DNA of 63,912 bases, the filler included, from Octopus bimaculoides (Eukaryota): the NCBI RefSeq assembly GCF_001194135.2. It is 6 parts of 6 records of this genome, joined end to end, with 100 filler letters (N's around TTAATTAATTAA, not from the genome) between each part and the next. Parts side by side here need not be neighbours in the genome. Positions count along the whole stretch, not along the records: positions 33,905 to 51,301 come from NC_068987.1; 5 more parts are not named here. One strand, written 5' to 3'. Both the position numbers and the translations under genes were made by a program. Below, piece by piece: positions 39,750 to 51,301 of the stretch. Below the pieces are notes generated by a model. It was not told the DNA's origin, searched no databases, and saw nothing but the letters and a program-made list of their open reading frames with translations. Position 1 is the first letter of the stretch; every line of letters starts with the position of its first letter.

Positions 39750-40420
39750 ATTCCCTGGACGGTCGTGGAATTTGAGTCCTTGGGCACCTCCTCCATAGAG
39801 TCATATCAAAAGCAACCGTCATTATAATTTCTTGCTGGATTACCATGCGTGGCCAACTGAGATTACAGATATTATCCAACCATGTGTTTCTTAATCTACC
39901 CCTAAGTCTCCTCCCGGTTGGCTTGGTTTGAAGAATTCGTCCAGTGACTCTTTCCTTGGACATTCTTATCACATGTCCTTAATACTGGAGCTGTGACTTC
40001 TCAATGCAGAGAAGTAACAACTCGACCTGGAGGGTCTCTCTGACCTCCGAACTATGTCATCTATCGAAAAAACGTTACTCCAGAGATCCTTCAGAGGAAT
40101 TCCATTTCGGCAGCTTGTATTCACAGTCGTACCCTTTCGGTCATTATTGAAAAAACATGACCCTAGTTGGGGACAGACGCGAAAACCGAACAGAAGTAGC
40201 TAGTTTGACATTCATACCAAGCTTTCCTCTTTTGACGATTGAATGATGGAGTTTGCACACTACTGTGCCAGCACTTGCAATTCTAGCATACAATTTAGCC
40301 TCCTGCTTCCCATGACTTCTGAGTACAACCACGATAAATTTGGTTTGCTTTCAAACCAGATTCCACCACTCTTTCACTCACATGCAGATTTTGAATTTGT
40401 TTCTGTGTAGAGATTACATG
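39750..40420 (-). mobile_element. RTE-clade LINE ORF C-terminal part
   Basis: HVIRMSKERVTGRILQTKPTGRRLRGRLRNTWLD; GKQEAKLYARIASAGTV..KLHHSIVKRGKLG..KL. Confidence 0.8.
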
Positions 40421-40706
40421 TCGTGATTGGTGAATGCCTAACTATCACGAAGGCAACACACACTTCAAACATACACAATATGTACATATGTTTATATGAA
40501 ATGTTGCGTGTACATGTTGTACTGTCCTATAGAACGTATCTATAGGTTTCTATTTTTCTATTCAACATTGTGTGTTACGACTATTGTAAATAATTCCTAT
40601 GTACAATAAGTCTTCAAATAATAAAAAGGGGCAACAACTATCCGTACGTTTCGACTCTTTTTGGAGTCAAATTATCATTAGCTTTGTACTACCATTGAAA
40701 TGTATG

Positions 40707-40737
<31 letters not shown>

Positions 40738-41251
40738 NNNNNNNNNNNNNNNNNNNNNNNNNNNNNNNNNNNNNNNNNNNNNNNNNNNNNNNNNNNNNNN
40801 NNNNNNNNNNNNNNNNNNNNNNNNNNNNNNNNNNNNNNNNNNNNNNNNNNNNNNNNNNNNNNNNNNNNNNNNNNNNNNNNNNNNNNNNNNNNNNNNNNNN
40901 NNNNNNNNNNNNNNNNNNNNNNNNNNNNNNNNNNNNNNNNNNNNNNNNNNNNNNNNNNNNNNNNNNNNNNNNNNNNNNNNNNNNNNNNNNNNNNNNNNNN
41001 NNNNNNNNNNNNNNNNNNNNNNNNNNNNNNNNNNNNNNNNNNNNNNNNAGACTATATGAATGCTAAAACTCCGATCCGTCGTAAGTTTGCACTGGGAATG
41101 TTTCCAGTAATTTTCAAACTTATTAAACACACACATGCAACAATATACACACGCTGAAGACATATATTTATGGTCTGCATGTGTATGTGTGTATGTATAC
41201 ACAAACAGAGAACGAAAGAGAGAGAGAGAGAGGGGGAGAGAGAGAGAGAGG

Positions 41252-41282
<31 letters not shown>

Positions 41283-41710
41283 TCAAACTATCACAAATAA
41301 TTAAATCTATATTTATAACAAAAAATAATACTGAAAGACATACACATGTATAGATTGAATACCAGGAATAGACAGATGTATGAAAACAAGATTCGCTGCA
41401 TTCTTGGAAATGATTATAATATATATAATATGGAAGGAGTTTCTGAAAACTCGAAATGGTGTGCTAGAAGAAAACGGTGGAAGAGTGGGAGACAAAAAAT
41501 GATTAAGAGGCCGAAAAAGAAAGAGACCTTTTTTTGTTTTTTTACTCTATTACTGGTTCCAGGCAGCTAGCGGCGGCCATGTTAGAGTAGCCACCTAGAT
41601 TGGTTTTAAAATAAAGACAATAAAAATATTAAGAAATACAGTCAATTGAGAGACTGAGTATTATATTGGTAATTTGTGTCTGTGTATACGTAGGTGTATA
41701 CGCACAGGCA

Positions 41711-41756
<46 letters not shown>

Positions 41757-42135
41757 CACACATATATATACAGGAGTGAAAATGTCTATAAACATATTTG
41801 GTTTTGTGAGTGCATGTGTGTCTAAGCTTGTATATGCGTGTGCAAGTGTGTATCAATGCATGTATGTAAGTATCGATATATTTTCTATACACGCATCCGC
41901 ATATTTTTACAGACAAAATATATATAGTATATGTATAGTTATTGTTTATATGTATATTTATGTATATATATATATTCAAATATATATATATATATATATA
42001 TATATTTCTTTTATTTTTATAAATATGTATATGTATATATACATGTATAATCTGTATGTACATGGGCATATTTACGCGTATGTACATATAGATATATATA
42101 ATACACGTATGTATATATATATATGTGTGTATATA

Positions 42136-42167
<32 letters not shown>

Positions 42168-42567
42168 NNNNNNNNNNNNNNNNNNNNNNNNNNNNNNNNN
42201 NNNNNNNNNNNNNNNNNNNNNNNNNNNNNNNNNNNNNNNNNNNNNNNNNNNNNNNNNNNNNNNNNNNNNNNNNNNNNNNNNNNNNNNNNNNNNNNNNNNN
42301 NNNNNNNNNNNNNNNNNNNNNNNNNNNNNNNNNNNNNNNNNNNNNNNNNNNNNNNNNNNNNNNNNNNNNNNNNNNNNNNNNNNNNNNNNNNNNNNNNNNN
42401 NNNNNNNNNNNNNNNNNNNNNNNNNNNNNNNNNNNNNNNNNNNNNNNNNNNNNNNNNNNNNNNNNNNNNNNNNNNNNNNNNNNNNNNNNNNNNNNNNNNN
42501 NNNNNNNNNNNNNNNNNNNNNNNNNNNNNNNNNNNNNNNNNNNNNNNNNNNNNNNNNNNNNNNNNNN

Positions 42568-42610
<43 letters not shown>

Positions 42611-42768
42611 AAAGTGTGTTTGTGTGGGGAGTGGGGGTGAAAGCGTGTGAGAATGAACAAATGAGAAAAATCAGAGGGAATTTAGTTATAGGATAGGAAA
42701 GCTACGGGGGAATAATTGTTAAATTAGTGAATTGAGGCTCGCATACCCTACGGGGAGGAAATAGCGAC

Positions 42769-42781
42769 TGACCTTTGACCT
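42769..42781. promoter_or_regulatory. Perfect DR1 nuclear-receptor element (TGACCT-T-TGACCT)
   Basis: Exact two half-sites, spacer 1. Confidence 0.3.
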
Positions 42782-43025
42782 ACTAATATTCACTTAATGG
42801 AAAATCATTTAGCTTGGCAAGAACATGGTCGTGGGGTGAGGGATGATTGCTTTATGCGATGGTTGTGAATAGTTACGTTTCGTATGCATCTCCATAAGTT
42901 ACAAGTTATGGGAGATCAAGGAGTTGGGGTAACGACTGGAATTCGGAAAGTAATACAGAAAATTAATAAACAGATAGGAAATAGTATAAAATAGCCAAAA
43001 AGCAATATAAGTGCGCGCGCGTACA

Positions 43026-43065
<40 letters not shown>

Positions 43066-43142
43066 CATACATACATACATACATGATGCATATATACATA
43101 TACGCACGTAGATGTGTATATGTGAATGTGCTGGTGTATGTC

Positions 43143-43196
<54 letters not shown>

Positions 43197-43527
43197 AATA
43201 CATACATACATACATACATACATACATACATACATAGATATAATCACGTAGNNNNNNNNNNNNNNNNNNNNNNNNNNNNNNNNNNNNNNNNNNNNNNNNN
43301 NNNNNNNNNNNNNNNNNNNNNNNNNNNNNNNNNNNNNNNNNNNNNNNNNNNNNNNNNNNNNNNNNNNNNNNNNNNNNNNNNNNNNNNNNNNNNNNNNNNN
43401 NNNNNNNNNNNNNNNNNNNNNNNNNNNNNNNNNNNNNNNNNNNNNNNNNNNNNNNNNNNNNNNNNNNNNNNNNNNNNNNNNNNNNNNNNNNNNNNNNNNN
43501 NNTATATATATATAGATATAGATAGAT

Positions 43528-43590
<63 letters not shown>

Positions 43591-43637
43591 CATACATACA
43601 TACATACATACATACATACATACATACATACATACAC

Positions 43638-43800
43638 ACCCTACCACAAAAATTAAGAAATCTGAATAAGATGGAAGTAGATATCTTCAAAAAGGAACTA
43701 GACATCTTCCTCTCCACAATACCGGATGAACCAACAGCCTGACATGAGATGCAGACGAGAGCAGCGGAATCAAACTTCCTTATACACCAAATGGGCCAAC
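43638..43800 (+). mobile_element. CR1/L2-group LINE C-terminal fragment
   Basis: LPQKLRNLNKMEVDIFKKELDIFLSTIPDEP..QTRAAESNFLIHQ. Confidence 0.7.
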
Positions 43801-43946
43801 AGCTAGGACAAAGGCACATACACGAGTGGTTATGTGTAACACCGCAGACTGAGGAAATCAATAAGACCACGGTGATGCTCCAGCATGACCGCAGCCGCAC
43901 GGCTGAAACTAGTAAAAGAATAATAGAATATATACATACATGCATG

Positions 43947-44002
<56 letters not shown>

Positions 44003-44129
44003 TGAATGGACAAAAGAAAGAAAGTGGCACTCAACACAGTTTGTAGGAGTTATATTATTTAATAACAGTTTGAAACGATTTAAGTTTCATAGTTATCTTC
44101 CATGAAGTTCTTCCATGATACCCATGCAT

Positions 44130-44480
44130 ATTGGATTCCAAAACCAATTGCTTTGGTCACATGATTCTTCTCTTCAATATGACAAATTTCTTTGATTAAA
44201 ATACCTCGTCCACCTTTTTTTTTATTATTCGTGGGGTATCCATCGGTGTTCCCAGCAACTTACGTATCGATTCGTTCCATTCCAGGATGGTCTTTCTCAC
44301 CTCAACAACTTTTCTCATAATCCTATCCATTGTGAACAATATTCGCAAAGCAGCACAAACCATGGTTCCTGCCAACCTGATAGCATTATTTGTTTGTGGG
44401 CTTTCATCCTTTCAAACACCTCTAGCAATGATGTTAAAGACATATTCCTCTAGTGAATGACGGGAAACTAAGACATTCTT
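44130..44480 (-). mobile_element. Possible very old RTE-type LINE 3' fragment
   Basis: Fragmentary KLLGTPMDTPR..KKRW motif on minus strand. Confidence 0.35.
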
Positions 44481-44710
44481 CTATGAACTTCCTAGCATAC
44501 TTTTCCATTTTATCTGATATTTTTAATAGCAAACGAAGCACTTCGAGTGGACATAAGAAACCGGAGAGAAAGTCAAGCCAAACAGTAGTGGTCATTGACA
44601 GTTAATTTCTATCACAACTTGGTATCATTTCAATAACACCCTTAGCATCAACCAAAGGTACTAGATAGATAAGAATAAAGCGTTTAACTGCCTGTTATTT
44701 GACCGTTGGC

Positions 44711-45090
44711 GTGGAGGCGCAATGGCCCAGTGGTTAGAGCAGCGGACTCGCGGTCATAGGATCGCGGTTTCGATTCCCAGACCGGGCGTTGTGAGTGTTT
44801 ATTGAGTGAAAACACCTAAAGCTCTACGAGGCTCCGGCAGGGGATGGTGGCGAACCCTGCTGTACTCTTTCACCACAACTTTCTCTCACTCTTACTTCCT
44901 GTTTCTGTTGTGCCTGTAATTCAAAGGGTCAGCCTTGTCACACTGTGTCACGCTGAGTATCCCCAAGAACTACATTAAGGGTACACGTGTCTGTGGAGTG
45001 CTCAGCCACTTGCACGTTAATTTCACGAGTAGGCTGTTCCGTTGATCAGATCAACTGGAACCCTCGATGTCGTAAGTGCCAACAACAACA
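44711..45090 (+). mobile_element. Full-length tRNA-derived SINE with 14-bp TSD
   Basis: A-box TGGCCCAGTGGTTAGAGCAG, B-box GGTTTCGATTCCC, (AAC)n tail; ATTTGACCGTTGGC at 44697-44710 and 45091-45104. Confidence 0.95.
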
Positions 45091-47013
45091 ATTTGACCGT
45101 TGGCACTAGCTTGCGTTCAATTTCAAAGCCGAATTGTTTAACTAAGAGGTTCCCAACCATTTATTACCGATAGACTCTTTTAATTACTATTTTATTCTGG
45201 TGGACTCCCATAACCATTCGATATTTACAAAGTAGCTTTATGGAAATTTCTTTCGAAATTCCTATTTCGTTTTTCACATATTAACTTGTGTCGGGTGAAC
45301 TATGTAAGATGTTAAAGAAAGATACCTAGTTGTTTCTTGCAAAACATACCAATACATTCATGTAAAGCAAAATTTTTTCAGGGGGAATACTATTGTGGAT
45401 TCCTAATTTACTATTTTCTTGCATGGTCTCCCAAAAATCTTATATGGACCTTCAGACGCCATATGGACCCTTTAACTGATCTAGCAATATGTAGAATCTG
45501 CAAACTTTTTTGCAGCTTAGTATGTAGTTGATTTTACTAAAATGGATAGCTTTTTCCAATATGGATTAGGAGAGATTTCTCTTTTTCTTACCACAAGAGC
45601 GGTAATGTCCTCTGTAAAAGTACACAACGTTAGCTATACCAATTATATGCACGCATACATACAAGGAAATGAACACACGCACACATATCTATACTATAAA
45701 AGGCAAATCTACTCTGTGTGTGTGTATGTTTAAAATTCATACATTTACACAATTCAAAATTTCTTCGATTAAACAATCGCAATTAATATTCTAAATACAA
45801 TAAGTTAGGTCACTGCGTCATTTTTTCACTCCAAAAATTTCCTGAGTAAACATTTTCTCCCTAATAAAATCTAATTTCCTTTTTCTAATACAAATCCTTT
45901 CAACTCCTACTTCCTCTGATGAACCTTTACGAAAAATCAAACAACAAATACAAAAATAAAGGAAGGAGAAAGAGAAAACTATTTCAATATCAAATCACAT
46001 TTCGATACTGTAATGACAGATACTAAAAGTACATACAAAATTACTTTGCCCCTCTAAAATTAACTATTTCTATTCCTCTTACACATCGTTTCAATTGCTA
46101 CTTTCTTTNNNNNNNNNNNNNNNNNNNNNNNNNNNNNNNNNNNNNNNNNNNNNNNNNNNNNNNNNNNNNNNNNNNNNNNNNNNNNNNNNNNNNNNNNNNN
46201 NNNNNNNNNNNNNNNNNNNNNNNNNNNNNNNNNNNNNNNNNNNNNNNNNNNNNNNNNNNNNNNNNNNNNNNNNNNNNNNNNNNNNNNNNNNNNNNNNNNN
46301 NNNNNNNNNNNNNNNNNNNNNNNNNNNNNNNNNNNNNNNNNNNNNNNNNNNNNNNNNNNNNNNNNNNNNNNNNNNNNNNNNNNNNNNNNNNNNNNNNNNN
46401 NNNNNNNNNNNNNNNNNNNNNNNNNNNNNNNNNNNNNNNNNNNNNNNNNNNNNNNNNNNNNNNNNNNNNNNNNNNNNNNNNNNNNNNNNNNNNNNNNNNN
46501 NNNNNNNNNNNNNNNNNNNNNNNNNNNNNNNNNNNNNNNNNNNNNNNNNNNNNNNNNNNNNNNNNNNNNNNNNNNNNNNNNNNNNNNNNNNNNNNNNNNN
46601 NNNNNNNNNNNNNNNNNNNNNNNNNNNNNNNNNNNNNNNNNNNNNNNNNNNNNNNNNNNNNNNNNNNNNNNNNNNNNNNNNNNNNNNNNNNNNNNNNNNN
46701 NNNNNNNNNNNNNNNNNNNNNNNNNNNNNNNNNNNNNNNNNNNNNNNNNNNNNNNNNNNNNNNNNNNNNNNNNNNNNNNNNNNNNNNNNNNNNNNNNNNN
46801 NNNNNNNNNNNNNNNNNNNNNNNNNNNNNNNNNNTGTCATTCTCTTCCAAATACGATCGACAGTCAAACATTTATTCCTTACAAACTGAATTTTTTTAAT
46901 ATCTTTCTTGAAACGCATTTACTTACTACCATATATAGACACAGAATACACATTAATACACACATACATACAAATATCTGTCATTTTTTTTTAGTGTGTG
47001 TGTGTGTTGCCCA

Positions 47014-47796
47014 TCTTAATATATAATGCTGAAGTTCTGTACTTACTAACATTTTTTTATTTAGTGTGTATGTGTGTGTGTGTGTGTTGCCCATATATAT
47101 ATGCACTTAAGACTTAGTTGTTGGTTGGGAGTTTCATCTGCAGAGGTCATTATTATTATTATTCAAATTAACACCCGCACGATTTTCACTAGGGTGTTAG
47201 GGTTACGGTTTCGGGGTCAGGGTTACGGTTTTAGGGTTACGATGAGGGTTAGTCTTACGGTTACGGGTTTAGGGTTAGGGTTACGTAATCGTGCGGGTGT
47301 TGTTCTGTTTAATATGTACATAGATTATGCCTCCGTTTAAAAAGACAGCAACAGACTGCAGCAATTCACCACATTCAAGAAGTTACTTTGAACATAATGC
47401 AAAACGGTGCATCATCATCTACTGCCCAATCTGATAGAATTCTGGCAGAACTGTGTAGCAACAGATCGTCAGCAATTGCGTCATCAGAAATTGCCGTCCT
47501 ACCTCCTGCGAAAAGGAATTACCCTGCTACGTGTAATCAAGGCAGCGCAAAAAGTTGTTTTGCACAAGCATTTCTATAGCCAATTAGACGGATGAAATTT
47601 ACGTACACTTAATAATGTTACACAAAACAGCCTTCAGACTTCCCCTATTAATTTCGTCTTTTGAATTATGAACATATTTACATCATATGGGTTTTTTCAT
47701 TGTAAGGCTTTCTTTTTTAGTTGATTTTCACCTAGCAAGACTTATCGTAGGTGGCGTAATAAGTCACACCCGGACAACGTCGGGTTATACTGCTAG
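47014..47796 (+). mobile_element. Non-autonomous Helitron
   Basis: 5' A|TCTTAATATATAAT; 3' hairpin ACCCGGACAACGTCGGGT (47768-47785) then CTAG|T; internal TTAGGG/TTACGG tract 47188-47285. Confidence 0.75.
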
Positions 47797-47799
47797 TTT

Positions 47800-48720
47800 T
47801 CTATAAACTAGATCAATTTAAGGGAAACATCAGATTCATATGATAAATTATAAACCAAACTAAAAGCCTGTAGTTAAAGCTGAATTTATAATTCTTAACT
47901 ATAATACAAAGTATATGTTAATAGCTACAAGTTGAGTTATAGATCAAGTTTTTGCCATCTATAGATCAAAATATTGGTTAAGTCTAAAATCTAATTGTAT
48001 ATGTTAGACTATAGGCCAAAATATATGTCATAGTATAGGCCAATTTATAGGCTGATTATAAGACGAATTTATAGGTTAAAATATATAAGCTAAGCAATAC
48101 ACCAAACAATAAGCTTAAAGCTATAGGTTAAATTATATGCTATACTAGTGGTTAAAAATTATAATTTGATAAATATATACATTATAATAAATACTCTTAG
48201 GTTAAATTATAGGCTTATCTATAGGTTGTTTAGGTTTTGCTAGGCTTAAGAATTTATAAACCATTTATAAATAGATACAAAAAATTATTGAGATTTTTTT
48301 ATCAAAAGTAATGTAAAAAGAAAAAAGCTATTCATCAATAGGATAAAATCAATAAGCAATAAGCTAACAAAATTTAAGCAAAGCTATAAATTCATTGATT
48401 AACAGATCAATACACAAAATTACGTTTAACTACTGGCTAAAAGTCTATAATTCATAGATAATTTTAAAAATAAAGATTAATGTCAATGCTAGAAAATAAT
48501 ATCCATTTTTATGGTATATATATTATATATTTTATTCTACAGATATTTGAATTGATGATTCTATATTTAATTGATATTAGGTGATTCCAGTCTATGAGTA
48601 ATAGGAGATTGAAATTCTATAGACAAAATTATAGATTAAATTCTATAGGTAAACTAAAGGCAGCTTCATTGGCTGAGTTATATACACAAACGCATAAATT
48701 AGAATCTAAATGCTAAACTT
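47800..48720. repeat. Degenerate AT-rich satellite-like tract (TATAGGTTAAA-type units)
   Basis: Recurrent TATAGG(T/C)TAAA(T)TATA at e.g. 48069, 48122, 48198, 48219, 48644. Confidence 0.5.
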
Positions 48721-48868
48721 TAAGGGGATTTTTATATCCAACTTAACATGGATGTCTTCTTAGAACACCGAACACTGCGTTATGATCCTTTAGGAGATCT
48801 TTTGATATAGGTGCTTGGTCTATTAAAGCATAGCTATAGATCATAGCAGACGATTTTCGTCTGTAATG

Positions 48869-48929
48869 GGTGCCGGAATTCCAATATCAAGTAATTTCGT
48901 TCTGTTGGAACTCATCAGTGGCAAGCACC
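48869..48929 (-). ncRNA. Type I hammerhead ribozyme (Sm-alpha-like)
   Basis: ggtgc tt gcca CTGATGA gttc-caaca-gaac GAAA ttacttga TA ttggaa ttcc ggcacc; intact core, 4-bp stem II, distal stem I ggtgc/gcacc; predicted cut 3' of A48885. Confidence 0.85.
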
Positions 48930-49381
48930 GGGTGACTGCATGACAGTTAAACCTTGCTGATACGATATAAATATAGAATTGCAGCATATTTTCAGATGCT
49001 GACATCACAAATAGCCAGCAGATTTACTGAAAATTAATTATTAGCGACGGAAGCAGTATTAATACCAAAAGATAATCATTATTTCCAACTAAACATGGAT
49101 GCCTTATTAGAACACCGAATACTGCATTATTAGCCTTGAGAAATCCTCTCCTGAAGGAGCTTGGTGTGCATAAAAGCACACACATAGATCGTAGCAGACG
49201 AAATTTGTCTGTCACAGGCGCTGGAATTTCCATATCACATGCATTTTTGATATTTATACTGCTTCCATCACTGATAACTAATTTTTGATAAGCCTGCTGG
49301 ATATTTGTGACATCTTAGCCTGAAAAGGTTTGGGAATTCTGTATATCATAGCAATGAAATTTGACTGGCATGCGGTCAACC

Positions 49382-49432
49382 GGTGCTTCCCACTGATGAG
49401 GTCCAATAAGACGAAATCATGTGATATGGGGA
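49382..49432 (+). ncRNA. Type I hammerhead ribozyme (inverted copy)
   Basis: ggtgc ttccca CTGATGA g gtc-caataa-gac GAAA tcatgtga TA tgggga; intact core, 6-bp stem I; predicted cut 3' of A49426. Confidence 0.8.
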
Positions 49433-49898
49433 ATTCTGTTGCCCAAGACAGACGAATTTCATTTCCTATGACTTATGTGTACTTTCATTTTGGCTTATGC
49501 AAAATATTCTAGCGTAGCATCATCGTTCATTTAGTGTTTTCTTTCTTGGTTAACAATTCTCATTATTTCCTGAAAAGCTTCAGATTCGTTGTTCGTCATA
49601 CGACAACTTCTGTTTCCAATTTTGCATAAATTTCATTCCTATCTTCCTCAGTTAATGCTTCTTATCCTTCCTGATTCTCCTCTCTTTTTTCCTAATTCTT
49701 ATTTCTTCTATTAGCCCTCCCTTCCCTAATTTTTTTCTGTATCTTCTCTGCCTCTTTCGACTCAATTCTCGCTGTCCTTCGCTATGATATCAGTCCACAG
49801 CAACGCACGAAAGACCGTTCCGATAACAGAATAATTTAAAACACCCGTATTCCTGATATATTGTTATGCACATTTAACGAAGAAATTTAAGCAAACGG

Positions 49899-50262
49899 TT
49901 AACCCTGCGCGCGTTAGCGAAACAGGGTTATTGTAGTCGCTCGTCTTTGTTTCTTTGTCTGTATGTTTGCAAAATTACTGGAAAACGGCTAAACGGATGT
50001 TCACCAAATTTGGCAGAAATGCTCATTGGATGAGTGGTTCGAACTCATTAACTTTTGGTTTATCTTCAAAACTGGCAGGCGGGTGAATCAAAATGCTTAA
50101 TTTTTTTTCTTTGCTAAATATACATAAACGATAATCAGGGAAAATAACTCTTGGTGTCATTTTGTTGAAATATAAATTCGTCTAAGAATATATTCATTAA
50201 AATAAATGTTACTTTATCCTTGTGTGCGTGCAGGGTATGCATTGCTCCTCCGATGCCTTTTT
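49899..50262 (+). mobile_element. Helentron-associated non-autonomous element (second family)
   Basis: SubTIRs TAACCCTGCGCGC / GCGTGCAGGGTA, 3' hairpin GCATTGCTCCTCCGATGC, T-rich end, internal CCAAATTTGGCAG. Confidence 0.65.
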
Positions 50263-50707
50263 CTTTTTTTTTTTTGGCGAAGAGAATCCGTATCCAACAT
50301 ATACCGTAACATATACTTTACGAAGGAAGTTAGGAACATGTCTATTAATAAATAGGTAATAGAACAGATAGATTTTCAGTGTTCAAAACAATGACTTCTT
50401 CTGAGATGCATCCTTAAACCATCGGGTAAAATAAAAAGATAAAGTCAGACAAACACTGATGTCACGTGCACACATACACACACAATACAAACCCCAATGG
50501 CGTGCGCGCACACATACATCCATTCCTTCTTACACATACATACACACACACACAGGCAACTGTCTGATTGTGTGTCTGTGTGCACCAACAACGTTCGTAC
50601 CTACGTGATGAGTGTAGATATGCACATACCAGTAGCGTTTATTTGAATCTCTCTGTATATCTATCTATCTCTTGATTTCTAACAATCTCTTCCTTTCTCA
50701 CTCCCCC

Positions 50708-50738
<31 letters not shown>

Positions 50739-51230
50739 GCACGCACAGTTTTACTATCCCAATTCTACAGCCTTGCTGAATTTTTTACACCACAGGAATT
50801 TATCGTTAGCACTTTAATAAGATAAATTGAAAAATGTAGCCAGTAAATTAGCTACAGAAGTATAGGTAACAATTATATGAAGTACTATACGCTAAACGTA
50901 TCATTTAATCCGCGGGCTAAATATATACAGCTATACCCAAAACTGTAAGTTTAATTATGTGCTGATCTAGAGGCTGAATTAGGTTGATATCTGGGATAAA
51001 ACGTCATAATATATATAATTACACAAATTGTTAATCAACTATGGATGGATGGATGGATGGATCTGAAAAGGCGCATGGCCTAGTGGTTAGGATGTTGCAT
51101 TCATTTATGATCGCATAAGTGTTGTTTCGATTTACTGACCAGTGGTACGTTTCGTTCTTGAACAAACCCTTCGCTTCACGTTGCTCCAGTCTGATCAGCT
51201 GCATTGGATAACAATGACTTGAATACACAT

Positions 51231-51301
<71 letters not shown>

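What the first reader, a model, noticed from the sequence alone, without database searches (positions are those of the whole stretch)
48741..49500. Candidate cephalopod non-LTR retrozyme: ~348-nt repeat unit with a type I hammerhead ribozyme
Seen: an ORF-less unit repeats at offset 347 (48745 vs 49092). It contains a canonical hammerhead with core CUGAUGA/GAAA, paired stem II, short stem III, an AUA cleavage triplet and a bulged stem I closed by ggugc/gcacc. The distance between homologous cut sites on the minus strand (49232 to 48885) is 348 nt. Established: tandem 170-400-nt units with one type I hammerhead define the metazoan non-LTR retrozymes described in coral, mussel and axolotl, which self-cleave into monomers that circularise. 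Inference: this is a family of that class, unrelated to the Penelope hammerheads elsewhere in the window (different stems). I cannot tell whether it has been reported in cephalopods.
Basis: partly seen in the sequence, partly recalled or inferred. Interest (0 to 1): 0.88.

Follow-up and report, generated by a model that had tools for sequence, protein, structure and literature searches.

The report
Decayed hammerhead-ribozyme retroelement relic
This is an old, mutated remnant of a small non-coding mobile element that carries a self-cutting hammerhead RNA motif, a kind already known in molluscs and other animals, and this copy can probably no longer release an RNA circle.

Summary
The repeat and the hammerhead motifs are real, but the locus is not a tandem array of ribozyme-bearing units.

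- **Anatomy:** there is one full 347-nt unit (48732-49078), read on the minus strand. Upstream of it sits a 5'-truncated second copy (49079 to about 49254). Head-to-head against that copy sits an inverted partial copy (49245-49488, plus strand). The copies are 74-77% identical. No other copy lies in the piece.
- **Hammerheads:** only two are complete, one per strand, with cut sites after A48885 (-) and A49426 (+). Both keep CUGAUGA and GAAA and have the canonical metazoan type I architecture. Each has a damaged helix.
- **Scores:** both motifs score 23-26 bits against Rfam HH9, whose threshold is 52. A strict descriptor matches them but almost never matches shuffled sequence.
- **Missing ribozyme:** the upstream homologous cut site (A49233) has no ribozyme, so this locus cannot excise a 348-nt monomer.
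- **Best reading:** this is a fossil insertion of a retrozyme-type, ORF-less hammerhead element. Its partial-tandem-plus-inverted-copy shape is typical of Penelope-like element integration.
- **Not checked:** cephalopod origin, genomic copy number and cleavage activity could not be checked.

It is a known kind of element and of low to moderate interest.

The parts
48732..49078 (-). Copy 1: the only full repeat unit (347 nt; ribozyme sense is the minus strand).
   Evidence: Direct and inverted repeat families and in-piece blastn; alignments. GC is 0.372.
48873..48931 (-). Hammerhead of copy 1. CUGAUGA runs 48918->48912. Stem II is GUUC/GAAC with loop CAACA. GAAA runs 48898->48895. Stem III is AUU-ACUU-GAU. 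The cut is after A48885. Proximal stem I has 4 of 6 pairs (C.U and G.G mismatches). A possible distal closing helix is GGUGC/GCACC.
   Evidence: Rfam HH9 23.0 bits, E=0.0048 in 1 kb and 0.084 in the piece. Strict descriptor hit with 0/1000 shuffles. Coordinates. Energies.
48847..48863 (-). Small palindromic hairpin (CAGACG-loop-CGUCUG) just 3' of the hammerhead. It is also present in copy 2 (49195-49211) and decayed in copy 3.
   Evidence: Inverted repeat I8; alignment.
49079..49254 (-). Copy 2: a 5'-truncated partial unit directly upstream of copy 1 on the minus strand. It is clearly alignable to 49237, and probably to about 49246-49254. It keeps the 3' strand of stem I, stem III and a degenerate GAAA (now CAAAAA). 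The homologous cut position is A49233. It has no CUGAUGA box and no stem II.
   Evidence: 77% identity to copy 1; 37/48 identity to copy 3 across the ribozyme's 3' half. One search lists all CUGANGA boxes in the piece and finds none here. Coordinates.
49245..49488 (+). Copy 3: an inverted partial copy corresponding to unit positions 49070->48822 of copy 1. Its 5' end abuts the 5' end of copy 2 (head-to-head).
   Evidence: Inverted repeats I1-I3; blastn 74% over 233 nt, E=4.6e-35; alignments. Extension beyond 49488 is not significant.
49375..49449 (+). Hammerhead of copy 3. CUGAUGA is 49393-49399. GAAA is 49413-49416. Stem III is AUC-AUGU-GAU. The cut is after A49426. Proximal stem I is perfect at 6 bp (UUCCCA/UGGGGA). 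Stem II is damaged: GGUC...GAC gives 2 of 4 pairs, or 3 pairs with one bulged G.
   Evidence: Rfam HH9 26.1 bits, E=0.00052 in 1 kb and 0.009 in the piece. Descriptor hit only when a bulge is allowed, 5/1000 shuffles. Energies.

Best explanation
The locus is a fossil insertion of a short (about 348 nt), non-coding, hammerhead-bearing retroelement of the retrozyme type. Such an element is non-autonomous and probably depends on Penelope-like elements (PLEs) for mobility.

Inferred life cycle of the family, taken from the literature and not shown here: multimeric transcripts cut themselves after the A of an AUA triplet using a canonical type I hammerhead. The 348-nt monomers are ligated into circles. 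A PLE-type reverse transcriptase/endonuclease copies them back into DNA.

What is shown here: the insertion has the shape typical of PLE integration. A full copy is preceded by a 5'-truncated copy (partial tandem), and an inverted 5'-truncated copy abuts the 5' end.

Since insertion the three copies have each drifted, to about 0.27-0.32 substitutions per site pairwise. One ribozyme lost pairs in helix I, one lost pairs in helix II, and the third was never complete.

This locus now has only one complete ribozyme per strand. It cannot release a monomer or a circle and is most likely inert.
For: - The repeat anatomy is one full unit, one direct partial copy and one inverted partial copy.
- The three pairwise identities are nearly equal: 77%, 74% and 77%, giving JC distances of 0.28, 0.32 and 0.27. 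This fits three copies made in one event.
- The arms are not symmetrical about the junction. Copy 2 ends inside the ribozyme and copy 3 starts about 140 nt upstream of it. A simple fold-back duplication is therefore unlikely.
- Craig et al. 2021 (PMC8557442) describe PLE insertions as partial tandems, often with an inverted 5'-truncated copy adjacent at the 5' end.
- Cervera & de la Pena 2014 saw paired hammerheads 100-700 bp apart on opposite strands.
- The hammerhead is real. The core is intact in both complete copies, the descriptor gives 0/1000 and 5/1000 shuffles, and the sub-threshold Rfam HH9 alignments cover all three helices.
- The architecture is the canonical metazoan type I: helix I 6 bp, helix II 4 bp, short helix III with a tetraloop (definition).
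- The defects are complementary. Combining stem I of copies 3/2 with stem II of copy 1 gives a sequence whose MFE structure keeps helices I and II.
- The unit is 348 nt, 37% GC and ORF-less, which matches the non-LTR retrozyme description. Mussel units are 350-390 bp.
Against: - No other family member could be examined, because none of the searchable DNA collections holds animal genomes. Pattern scans gave 0 hits and the ORF-translation search gave none.
- No target-site duplication or 'tail' could be recognised (p=0.83).
- The 3' ends of copy 1 and copy 3 do not coincide in unit coordinates. This fits a circular or multimeric template, or later deletion, better than a simple 3'-anchored copy.
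- Rfam scores are about half the gathering score.
- The hammerhead folds are 12-14 kcal/mol above the MFE in present-day sequence.
- The monomer is not more structured than shuffles, z=-1.04.
- The hammerhead is not significantly better conserved than its flanks: 48/60 against 132/190, p=0.14.
- There are no compensatory double changes.
- No PLE ORF lies in the piece.
Confidence: 0.6

Rival explanations
1. This is a broken piece of a once longer tandem retrozyme or satellite array. The inverted copy and the truncation arose later by inversion or deletion, not at integration.
For: Non-LTR retrozymes are normally tandem arrays, from dimers to large multimers. The ends of copy 1 and copy 3 do not coincide in unit coordinates, as rearrangement might produce. 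No target-site duplication was found.
Against: Only 1.5 units survive, and no further degenerate units are detectable on either side. The head-to-head junction with a 5'-truncated copy is exactly the arrangement described for PLE-type integration. The nearly equal pairwise divergences need no extra event.
Confidence: 0.15
2. These are remnants of the pseudo-LTRs of an autonomous Penelope-like element whose coding body was lost, or was never copied because of extreme 5' truncation. On this reading there is no separate non-autonomous family.
For: PLE pLTRs carry type I hammerheads and form tandem/inverted structures. In Xenopus, retrozyme consensus sequences are sisters of PLE pLTRs.
Against: The repeat period is 348 nt, so the whole 'element' between homologous points is 348 nt with no ORF. 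The hammerhead is of the canonical type (helix II 4 bp, helix III present). It is not the minimal PLE type, which has helix II of 7-8 bp and no helix III. No PLE RT or GIY-YIG fragment lies in the piece.
Confidence: 0.12
3. The hammerhead resemblance is a chance match inside an ordinary decayed interspersed repeat and never had ribozyme function.
For: There is no Rfam gathering-level hit. Present-day sequences prefer other folds. There is no covariation and no significant extra conservation. The two motifs descend from one ancestor, so they count as one observation.
Against: The strict descriptor gives 0 hits in 1000 shuffles of 17.4 kb on both strands. All 11 core nucleotides are kept in both copies at about 75% background identity. 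Helix lengths and the loop 2 sequence match the canonical metazoan type I consensus. The helix defects of the two copies are different, and they disappear when the intact stems of the copies are combined, which points to an intact ancestral motif.
Confidence: 0.05

Closest known systems
Metazoan non-LTR retrozymes (Cervera & de la Pena 2020, NAR, PMC7229834), in particular the 350-390-bp Mytilus galloprovincialis repeats
   Same: Both have a canonical type I hammerhead inside a short (348 nt), AT-rich (37% GC), ORF-less repeat unit. Both have a short helix III capped by a tetraloop, as in invertebrate retrozyme ribozymes. A direct repeat of the unit is present.
   Different: This locus has only about 1.5 tandem units, and the second lacks the ribozyme. 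An inverted copy is attached. The sequences are decayed. There is no sequence similarity to the mussel or coral clones beyond the CACUGAUGAG box. The monomer fold is not unusually stable. Expression, cleavage and circles are untested.
Penelope-like element insertions with pseudo-LTRs (Craig et al. 2021, PMC8557442; Cervera & de la Pena 2014, PMC4209133)
   Same: The insertion architecture is the same: a full copy preceded by a 5'-truncated copy, plus an inverted 5'-truncated copy at the 5' end. Hammerheads end up on opposite strands a few hundred bp apart.
   Different: There is no RT/GIY-YIG ORF, and the unit is 348 nt rather than about 3 kb. The ribozyme is the canonical type, not the minimal PLE type. 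No 30-40-bp tail could be recognised.
Schistosoma Sm-alpha and the Rfam Hammerhead_HH9/Hammerhead_1 models (canonical metazoan type I hammerheads)
   Same: Helix lengths, the loop 2 sequence (GUUCCAACAGAAC against the HH9 consensus GCUCCAAAAAGAGC) and the internal loop in helix I are alike. The similarity in unit size to Sm-alpha (about 335 nt) is from my own recollection, not from a tool.
   Different: The scores are 23-26 bits against the HH9 gathering score of 52. No tRNA-like or pol III-type part was detected. There is no evidence of conservation or function.

Membership tests
Non-LTR retrozyme | Type I hammerhead with a complete catalytic core (CUGAUGA ... GAAA, cleavable H17) | tested here: met
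   Two motifs have an intact core, with A17 at 48885 (-) and 49426 (+). Each has one damaged helix.
Non-LTR retrozyme | Tandem repeat with a complete hammerhead in at least two consecutive units (operational criterion of Li et al. 2026; Fig. 1C of PMC7229834) | tested here: not met
   There are about 1.5 direct units. The second has no CUGAUGA box and no stem II. TRF with the preprint's parameters finds no array.
Non-LTR retrozyme | Unit of about 150-450 bp, GC below 45%, no coding capacity, no LTR/PBS/PPT | tested here: met
   The unit is 347/348 nt with GC 0.372. The longest ORF is 69 aa, with no Pfam hit and no homologue.
Non-LTR retrozyme | Many copies in the genome, from dimers to multimers | not testable with these tools
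   No animal genome collection is searchable by DNA. There is no further copy in the 17.4-kb piece, and pattern scans of the metagenome, viral and prokaryote collections gave 0 hits.
Non-LTR retrozyme | Self-cleavage and accumulation as monomeric circular RNA | not testable with these tools
   This needs in vitro transcription and RNA analysis. The energy model puts the hammerhead fold 12-14 kcal/mol above the MFE in both copies.
Non-LTR retrozyme | Highly self-paired monomer RNA | tested here: inconclusive
   The monomer MFE is -83.7 kcal/mol, z=-1.04 against 100 shuffles. The copy is decayed, so this says little about the family.
Rfam Hammerhead_HH9 (RF02275) / hammerhead clan CL00010 | Score at or above the curated gathering threshold | tested here: not met
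   There are no gathering-level hits. The scores are 26.1 and 23.0 bits against 52. Lower-scoring hits to other families of the hammerhead clan were suppressed by the tool and were not seen.
Penelope-like element (autonomous) | ORF with a PLE-type RT and a GIY-YIG endonuclease between the pseudo-LTRs | tested here: not met
   No such ORF lies in or next to the element. The only RT in the piece is an RVT_1 fragment of an RTE-like LINE, 12.5 kb away.
Penelope-like element (insertion architecture) | Partial tandem (5'-truncated copy before the full copy) plus an inverted 5'-truncated copy adjacent at the 5' end; optional 30-40-bp tail | tested here: met
   Copy 2 followed by copy 1 on the minus strand, with copy 3 inverted and head-to-head, matches the description. 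The tail and target duplication were not recognisable.
PLE minimal hammerhead (min-HHR) | Long helix II (7-8 bp), helix I of 4-5 bp, no or vestigial helix III | tested here: not met
   Here helix II is 4 bp, helix I is 6 bp, and helix III is 3 bp with a tetraloop.

The most novel reading that the evidence does not exclude
The unit belongs to a still undescribed retrozyme family of this (possibly cephalopod) genome that is active elsewhere and makes circles of about 348 nt. This fossil would then preserve a PLE-style integration footprint (partial tandem plus inverted 5'-truncated copy) for a canonical-hammerhead, ORF-less element. That would be direct structural evidence that Penelope-type machinery inserts retrozymes.
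Probability: 0.3. Interest if true: 0.45.

Novelty: new member of a known kind. Interest (0 to 1): 0.25.

Why it matters
Short hammerhead-bearing repeats are already known across invertebrates, including molluscs. Hammerhead loci have already been counted in a cephalopod genome. One decayed locus therefore adds little by itself.

Its one useful feature is its shape. A retrozyme-sized, non-coding unit shows the tandem/inverted insertion signature of Penelope-like elements. If that shape recurs genome-wide, it would support mobilisation of retrozymes by PLE machinery with structural evidence, rather than only phylogenetic evidence.

Tried and rejected
1. Rfam at gathering thresholds gave nothing.
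2. I looked for more copies or hammerheads in the piece with blastn, the Rfam E-value scan, my own descriptor and a list of all CUGANGA boxes. Only the three copies and two ribozymes were found.
3. I tested whether the inverted copy extends beyond 49488 to the same 3' end as copy 1. The alignment scores are no better than shuffles or control regions.
4. I looked for a target-site duplication at the borders. The best candidate (TTCA..TTGGCT) is not significant, p=0.83.
5. Two family-specific patterns were scanned in the metagenome, viral and prokaryotic genome collections and gave 0 hits. These collections do not hold animal genomes, so this says nothing about copy number.
6. I searched the protein database with the two spurious ORFs that cross the ribozyme, hoping to catch other copies called as genes. 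There were no candidates.
7. I tried to identify the organism through the RTE-like RT fragment. The relatives are gastropods, schistosomes and unnamed ENA contigs. One of those contigs carries a coral-type hammerhead, so the RT does not identify the host.
8. I tested homology to the published mussel and coral retrozyme clones. Only the core box matches.
9. I looked for a tRNA-like, SINE-like part and found none.
10. MFE folding of the single motifs does not return the hammerhead fold.
11. I rejected a viroid-like reading with ribozymes in both polarities, because the two ribozymes sit on different, inverted copies of the unit and not on both strands of one unit.

Full report
**What is in the sequence**

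Repeat finding, in-piece blastn and pairwise alignment agree on three related segments.
- **Copy 1** (48732-49078, 347 nt) is the only complete unit.
- **Copy 2** is a direct repeat of copy 1's left part with 347/348-nt spacing. It runs from 49079 and is clearly alignable to 49237 (77% identity over 160 nt, E=4e-29). A comparison with copy 3 shows that it continues to about 49246-49254.
- **Copy 3** (49245-49488) is an inverted copy of unit positions 49070->48822 (74% over 233 nt, E=4.6e-35).

No other copy exists in 33905-51301. TRF reports no period near 348, neither with the tool's settings nor with the parameters of a published retrozyme pipeline or relaxed ones.

In ribozyme sense, the minus strand reads 5'-[copy 2, truncated]-[copy 1, full]-3'. 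The 5' end of copy 3 abuts the 5' end of copy 2 on the other strand.

**The hammerheads**

Rfam gives no hit at gathering thresholds. In E-value mode the only ribozyme matches are to Hammerhead_HH9:
- 49375-49449 (+): 26.1 bits, E=5e-4 in a 1-kb search and 0.009 in the whole piece.
- 48873-48931 (-): 23.0 bits, E=0.005 and 0.084.

The gathering score is 52. Lower-scoring overlapping matches to other families of the same clan were left out by the tool.

I wrote my own type I descriptor. It requires:
- a CUGANGA box;
- a helix II of at least 3 bp;
- GAAA;
- a helix III hairpin with A15.1-U16.1;
- N17 not G;
- at least 4 of 6 pairs in proximal helix I.

It finds the minus-strand motif and nothing in 1000 block shuffles of the piece. 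With one bulge allowed in helix II it finds both motifs, and something in 5 of 1000 shuffles. The motif is therefore more than chance. The two occurrences descend from one ancestor, so they count as one observation.

Coordinates:

| Feature | Copy 1 (-) | Copy 3 (+) |
|---|---|---|
| CUGAUGA | 48918->48912 | 49393-49399 |
| GAAA | 48898->48895 | 49413-49416 |
| A17 | 48885 | 49426 |

The position in copy 2 homologous to the cut site is A49233, so the 'monomer' 49232->48885 is 348 nt. Copy 2 has no CUGAUGA box and no helix II, and its G12 is lost.

**Quality of the ribozymes**

The architecture is the canonical metazoan type I as defined by Cervera & de la Pena 2014: helix I 6 bp, helix II 4 bp and a short helix III with a small loop. 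It is not their minimal PLE type. Loop 2 (CCAACA/CCAAUAA) resembles the HH9 consensus.

Each copy is damaged.
- Copy 1 has two mismatches in proximal helix I.
- Copy 3 has a perfect helix I, but helix II has only 2 of 4 pairs (or 3 pairs with one bulged G).

With nearest-neighbour energies the hammerhead fold is -2.9 kcal/mol for copy 1 and -2.2 for copy 3. The corresponding MFEs are -15.5 and -16.7. In copy 1 the competitor is a GAGUUCCAA/UUGGAAUUC helix.

Taking helix I from copies 3/2 and helix II from copy 1 gives a sequence whose MFE keeps helices I and II. The Rfam HH9 consensus behaves similarly. The ancestor was therefore probably a sound hammerhead, and the present copies are probably weak or dead.

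There is one one-sided pair-preserving change (U.G to C-G in helix III) and no compensatory double change. The ribozyme is not significantly better conserved than its flanks: 48/60 against 132/190, p=0.14.

**Other properties**

- The unit GC is 0.372 and the piece GC is 0.364.
- The longest ORF across the element is 69 aa (96 codons stop to stop). These ORFs have no Pfam match and no relatives.
- There is no tRNA-like part.
- No other ribozyme family matches the region.
- The 347-nt monomer folds to -83.7 kcal/mol, z=-1.04, which is not unusual.
- No target-site duplication is recognisable.
- Copy 3 does not detectably extend to the same unit position at which copy 1 ends.

**Interpretation**

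Non-LTR retrozymes are short tandem repeats of about 150-450 bp with low GC and no ORF. Each unit carries a type I hammerhead, and the transcripts self-cleave and circularise. Mussel units are 350-390 bp, and PLEs are the suspected mobilisers (PMC7229834).

A 2026 preprint argues from phylogeny that animal retrozymes derive from PLE pseudo-LTRs. It defines active ones as tandem repeats with at least two consecutive units carrying complete hammerheads. This locus fails that criterion.

Craig et al. 2021 (PMC8557442) describe PLE insertions as follows:
- they are 5'-truncated;
- they are often partial tandems, with a full copy preceded by a truncated one;

That is the arrangement seen here. The three pairwise distances are nearly equal (JC 0.27-0.32), which fits a single event followed by independent decay. 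The junction is asymmetric in unit coordinates, which argues against a simple fold-back duplication.

I therefore read the locus as a fossil, PLE-style insertion of a retrozyme-type element, with confidence about 0.6.

Rivals:
- a rearranged fragment of a longer array (0.15);
- pseudo-LTR remnants of an autonomous PLE (0.12);
- a chance motif (0.05).

The steps 'self-cleavage, circularisation, reverse transcription by PLE machinery' are inferred from the literature. None is shown here.

**Organism and prior knowledge**

The cephalopod origin could not be checked. The only coding clue is an RTE-like RT fragment (35946-36275; RVT_1). Its best relatives are 60-81% identical and come from unnamed ENA contigs, gastropods and schistosomes.

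One of those contigs (L001) carries a hammerhead almost identical to the published Acropora retrozyme ribozyme. Such RTs therefore do not identify the host.

The giant squid genome paper lists 235 Rfam hammerhead_1 loci (PMC6962438). I found no paper describing retrozymes in cephalopods in the held library.

The unit shares nothing with the mussel or coral clones beyond the core box, as expected for species-specific families.

**Verdict**

This is a new, decayed member of a known kind, not an intact retrozyme, and it is of low to moderate interest. Its only notable aspect is the PLE-type insertion footprint on a retrozyme-sized unit.

Copy number, arrays elsewhere, cleavage and circles remain untested, because no animal genome or wet assay was available.

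Noticed in passing
window 35946-36611: This is a fragment of an RTE-like LINE reverse transcriptase. It has an RVT_1 match and a YADD box in a second frame at 36456-36611, so it is frameshifted and dead. Its relatives are 60-81% identical and come from gastropods, schistosomes and unnamed ENA contigs.
   Followed up: partly
window 47157-47314: A 28-nt inverted repeat (82% complementary, with a perfect 14-15-nt core ACACCCGCACGATT/AATCGTGCGGGTGT) brackets about 100 nt of degenerate telomere-like repeats (GTTAGGGTTACGG..., TRF period 20 at 47196-47285). It could be a small foldback element or an interstitial telomeric remnant.
   Followed up: partly
window 47993-48653: An AT-rich minisatellite-like stretch of TATAGGCCAAAA-type units (periods 12/24 and 13) ends about 80 nt from the left border of the element. 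PLEs are reported to prefer microsatellite targets (PMC8557442). The link was not tested.
   Followed up: no
L001 12505-12590 (ENA contig ERZ25071792:ctg18933_61x_l): Two hammerhead-like motifs lie side by side. The first (AUGAUGAGGCCCAGAAGGCCGAAACAGUUCUGUC) is almost the published Acropora millepora retrozyme ribozyme, but with the core C3 changed. The second (CUGAAGAGUGAAUUAUUCACGAAAC) has a 5-bp helix II. The contig is probably cnidarian.
   Followed up: partly
window 48875-48882, 49224-49232, 49430-49437: A GGAATTCC-type palindrome in the 3' strand of helix I is kept in all three copies (GGAATTCC, GGAAATTCC, GGAATTCT). In copy 1 it pairs with helix II/loop 2 (GAGUUCCAA) in the MFE fold. 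This could be a natural off-switch of the ribozyme, or just decay.
   Followed up: partly
window 34699-34819, 40738-41048, 42168-42567, 43252-43502, 46109-46834: Five runs of N (121-726 nt) are mostly flanked by microsatellites. The piece therefore comes from a gapped draft assembly, and repeat structures near the gaps may be incomplete. The element itself lies in gap-free sequence (46835-51301).
   Followed up: no
window 49620-49760: A CT-rich low-complexity stretch with weak 21- and 33-34-nt periodicity lies just right of the inverted copy. It has no recognisable relation to the unit.
   Followed up: no
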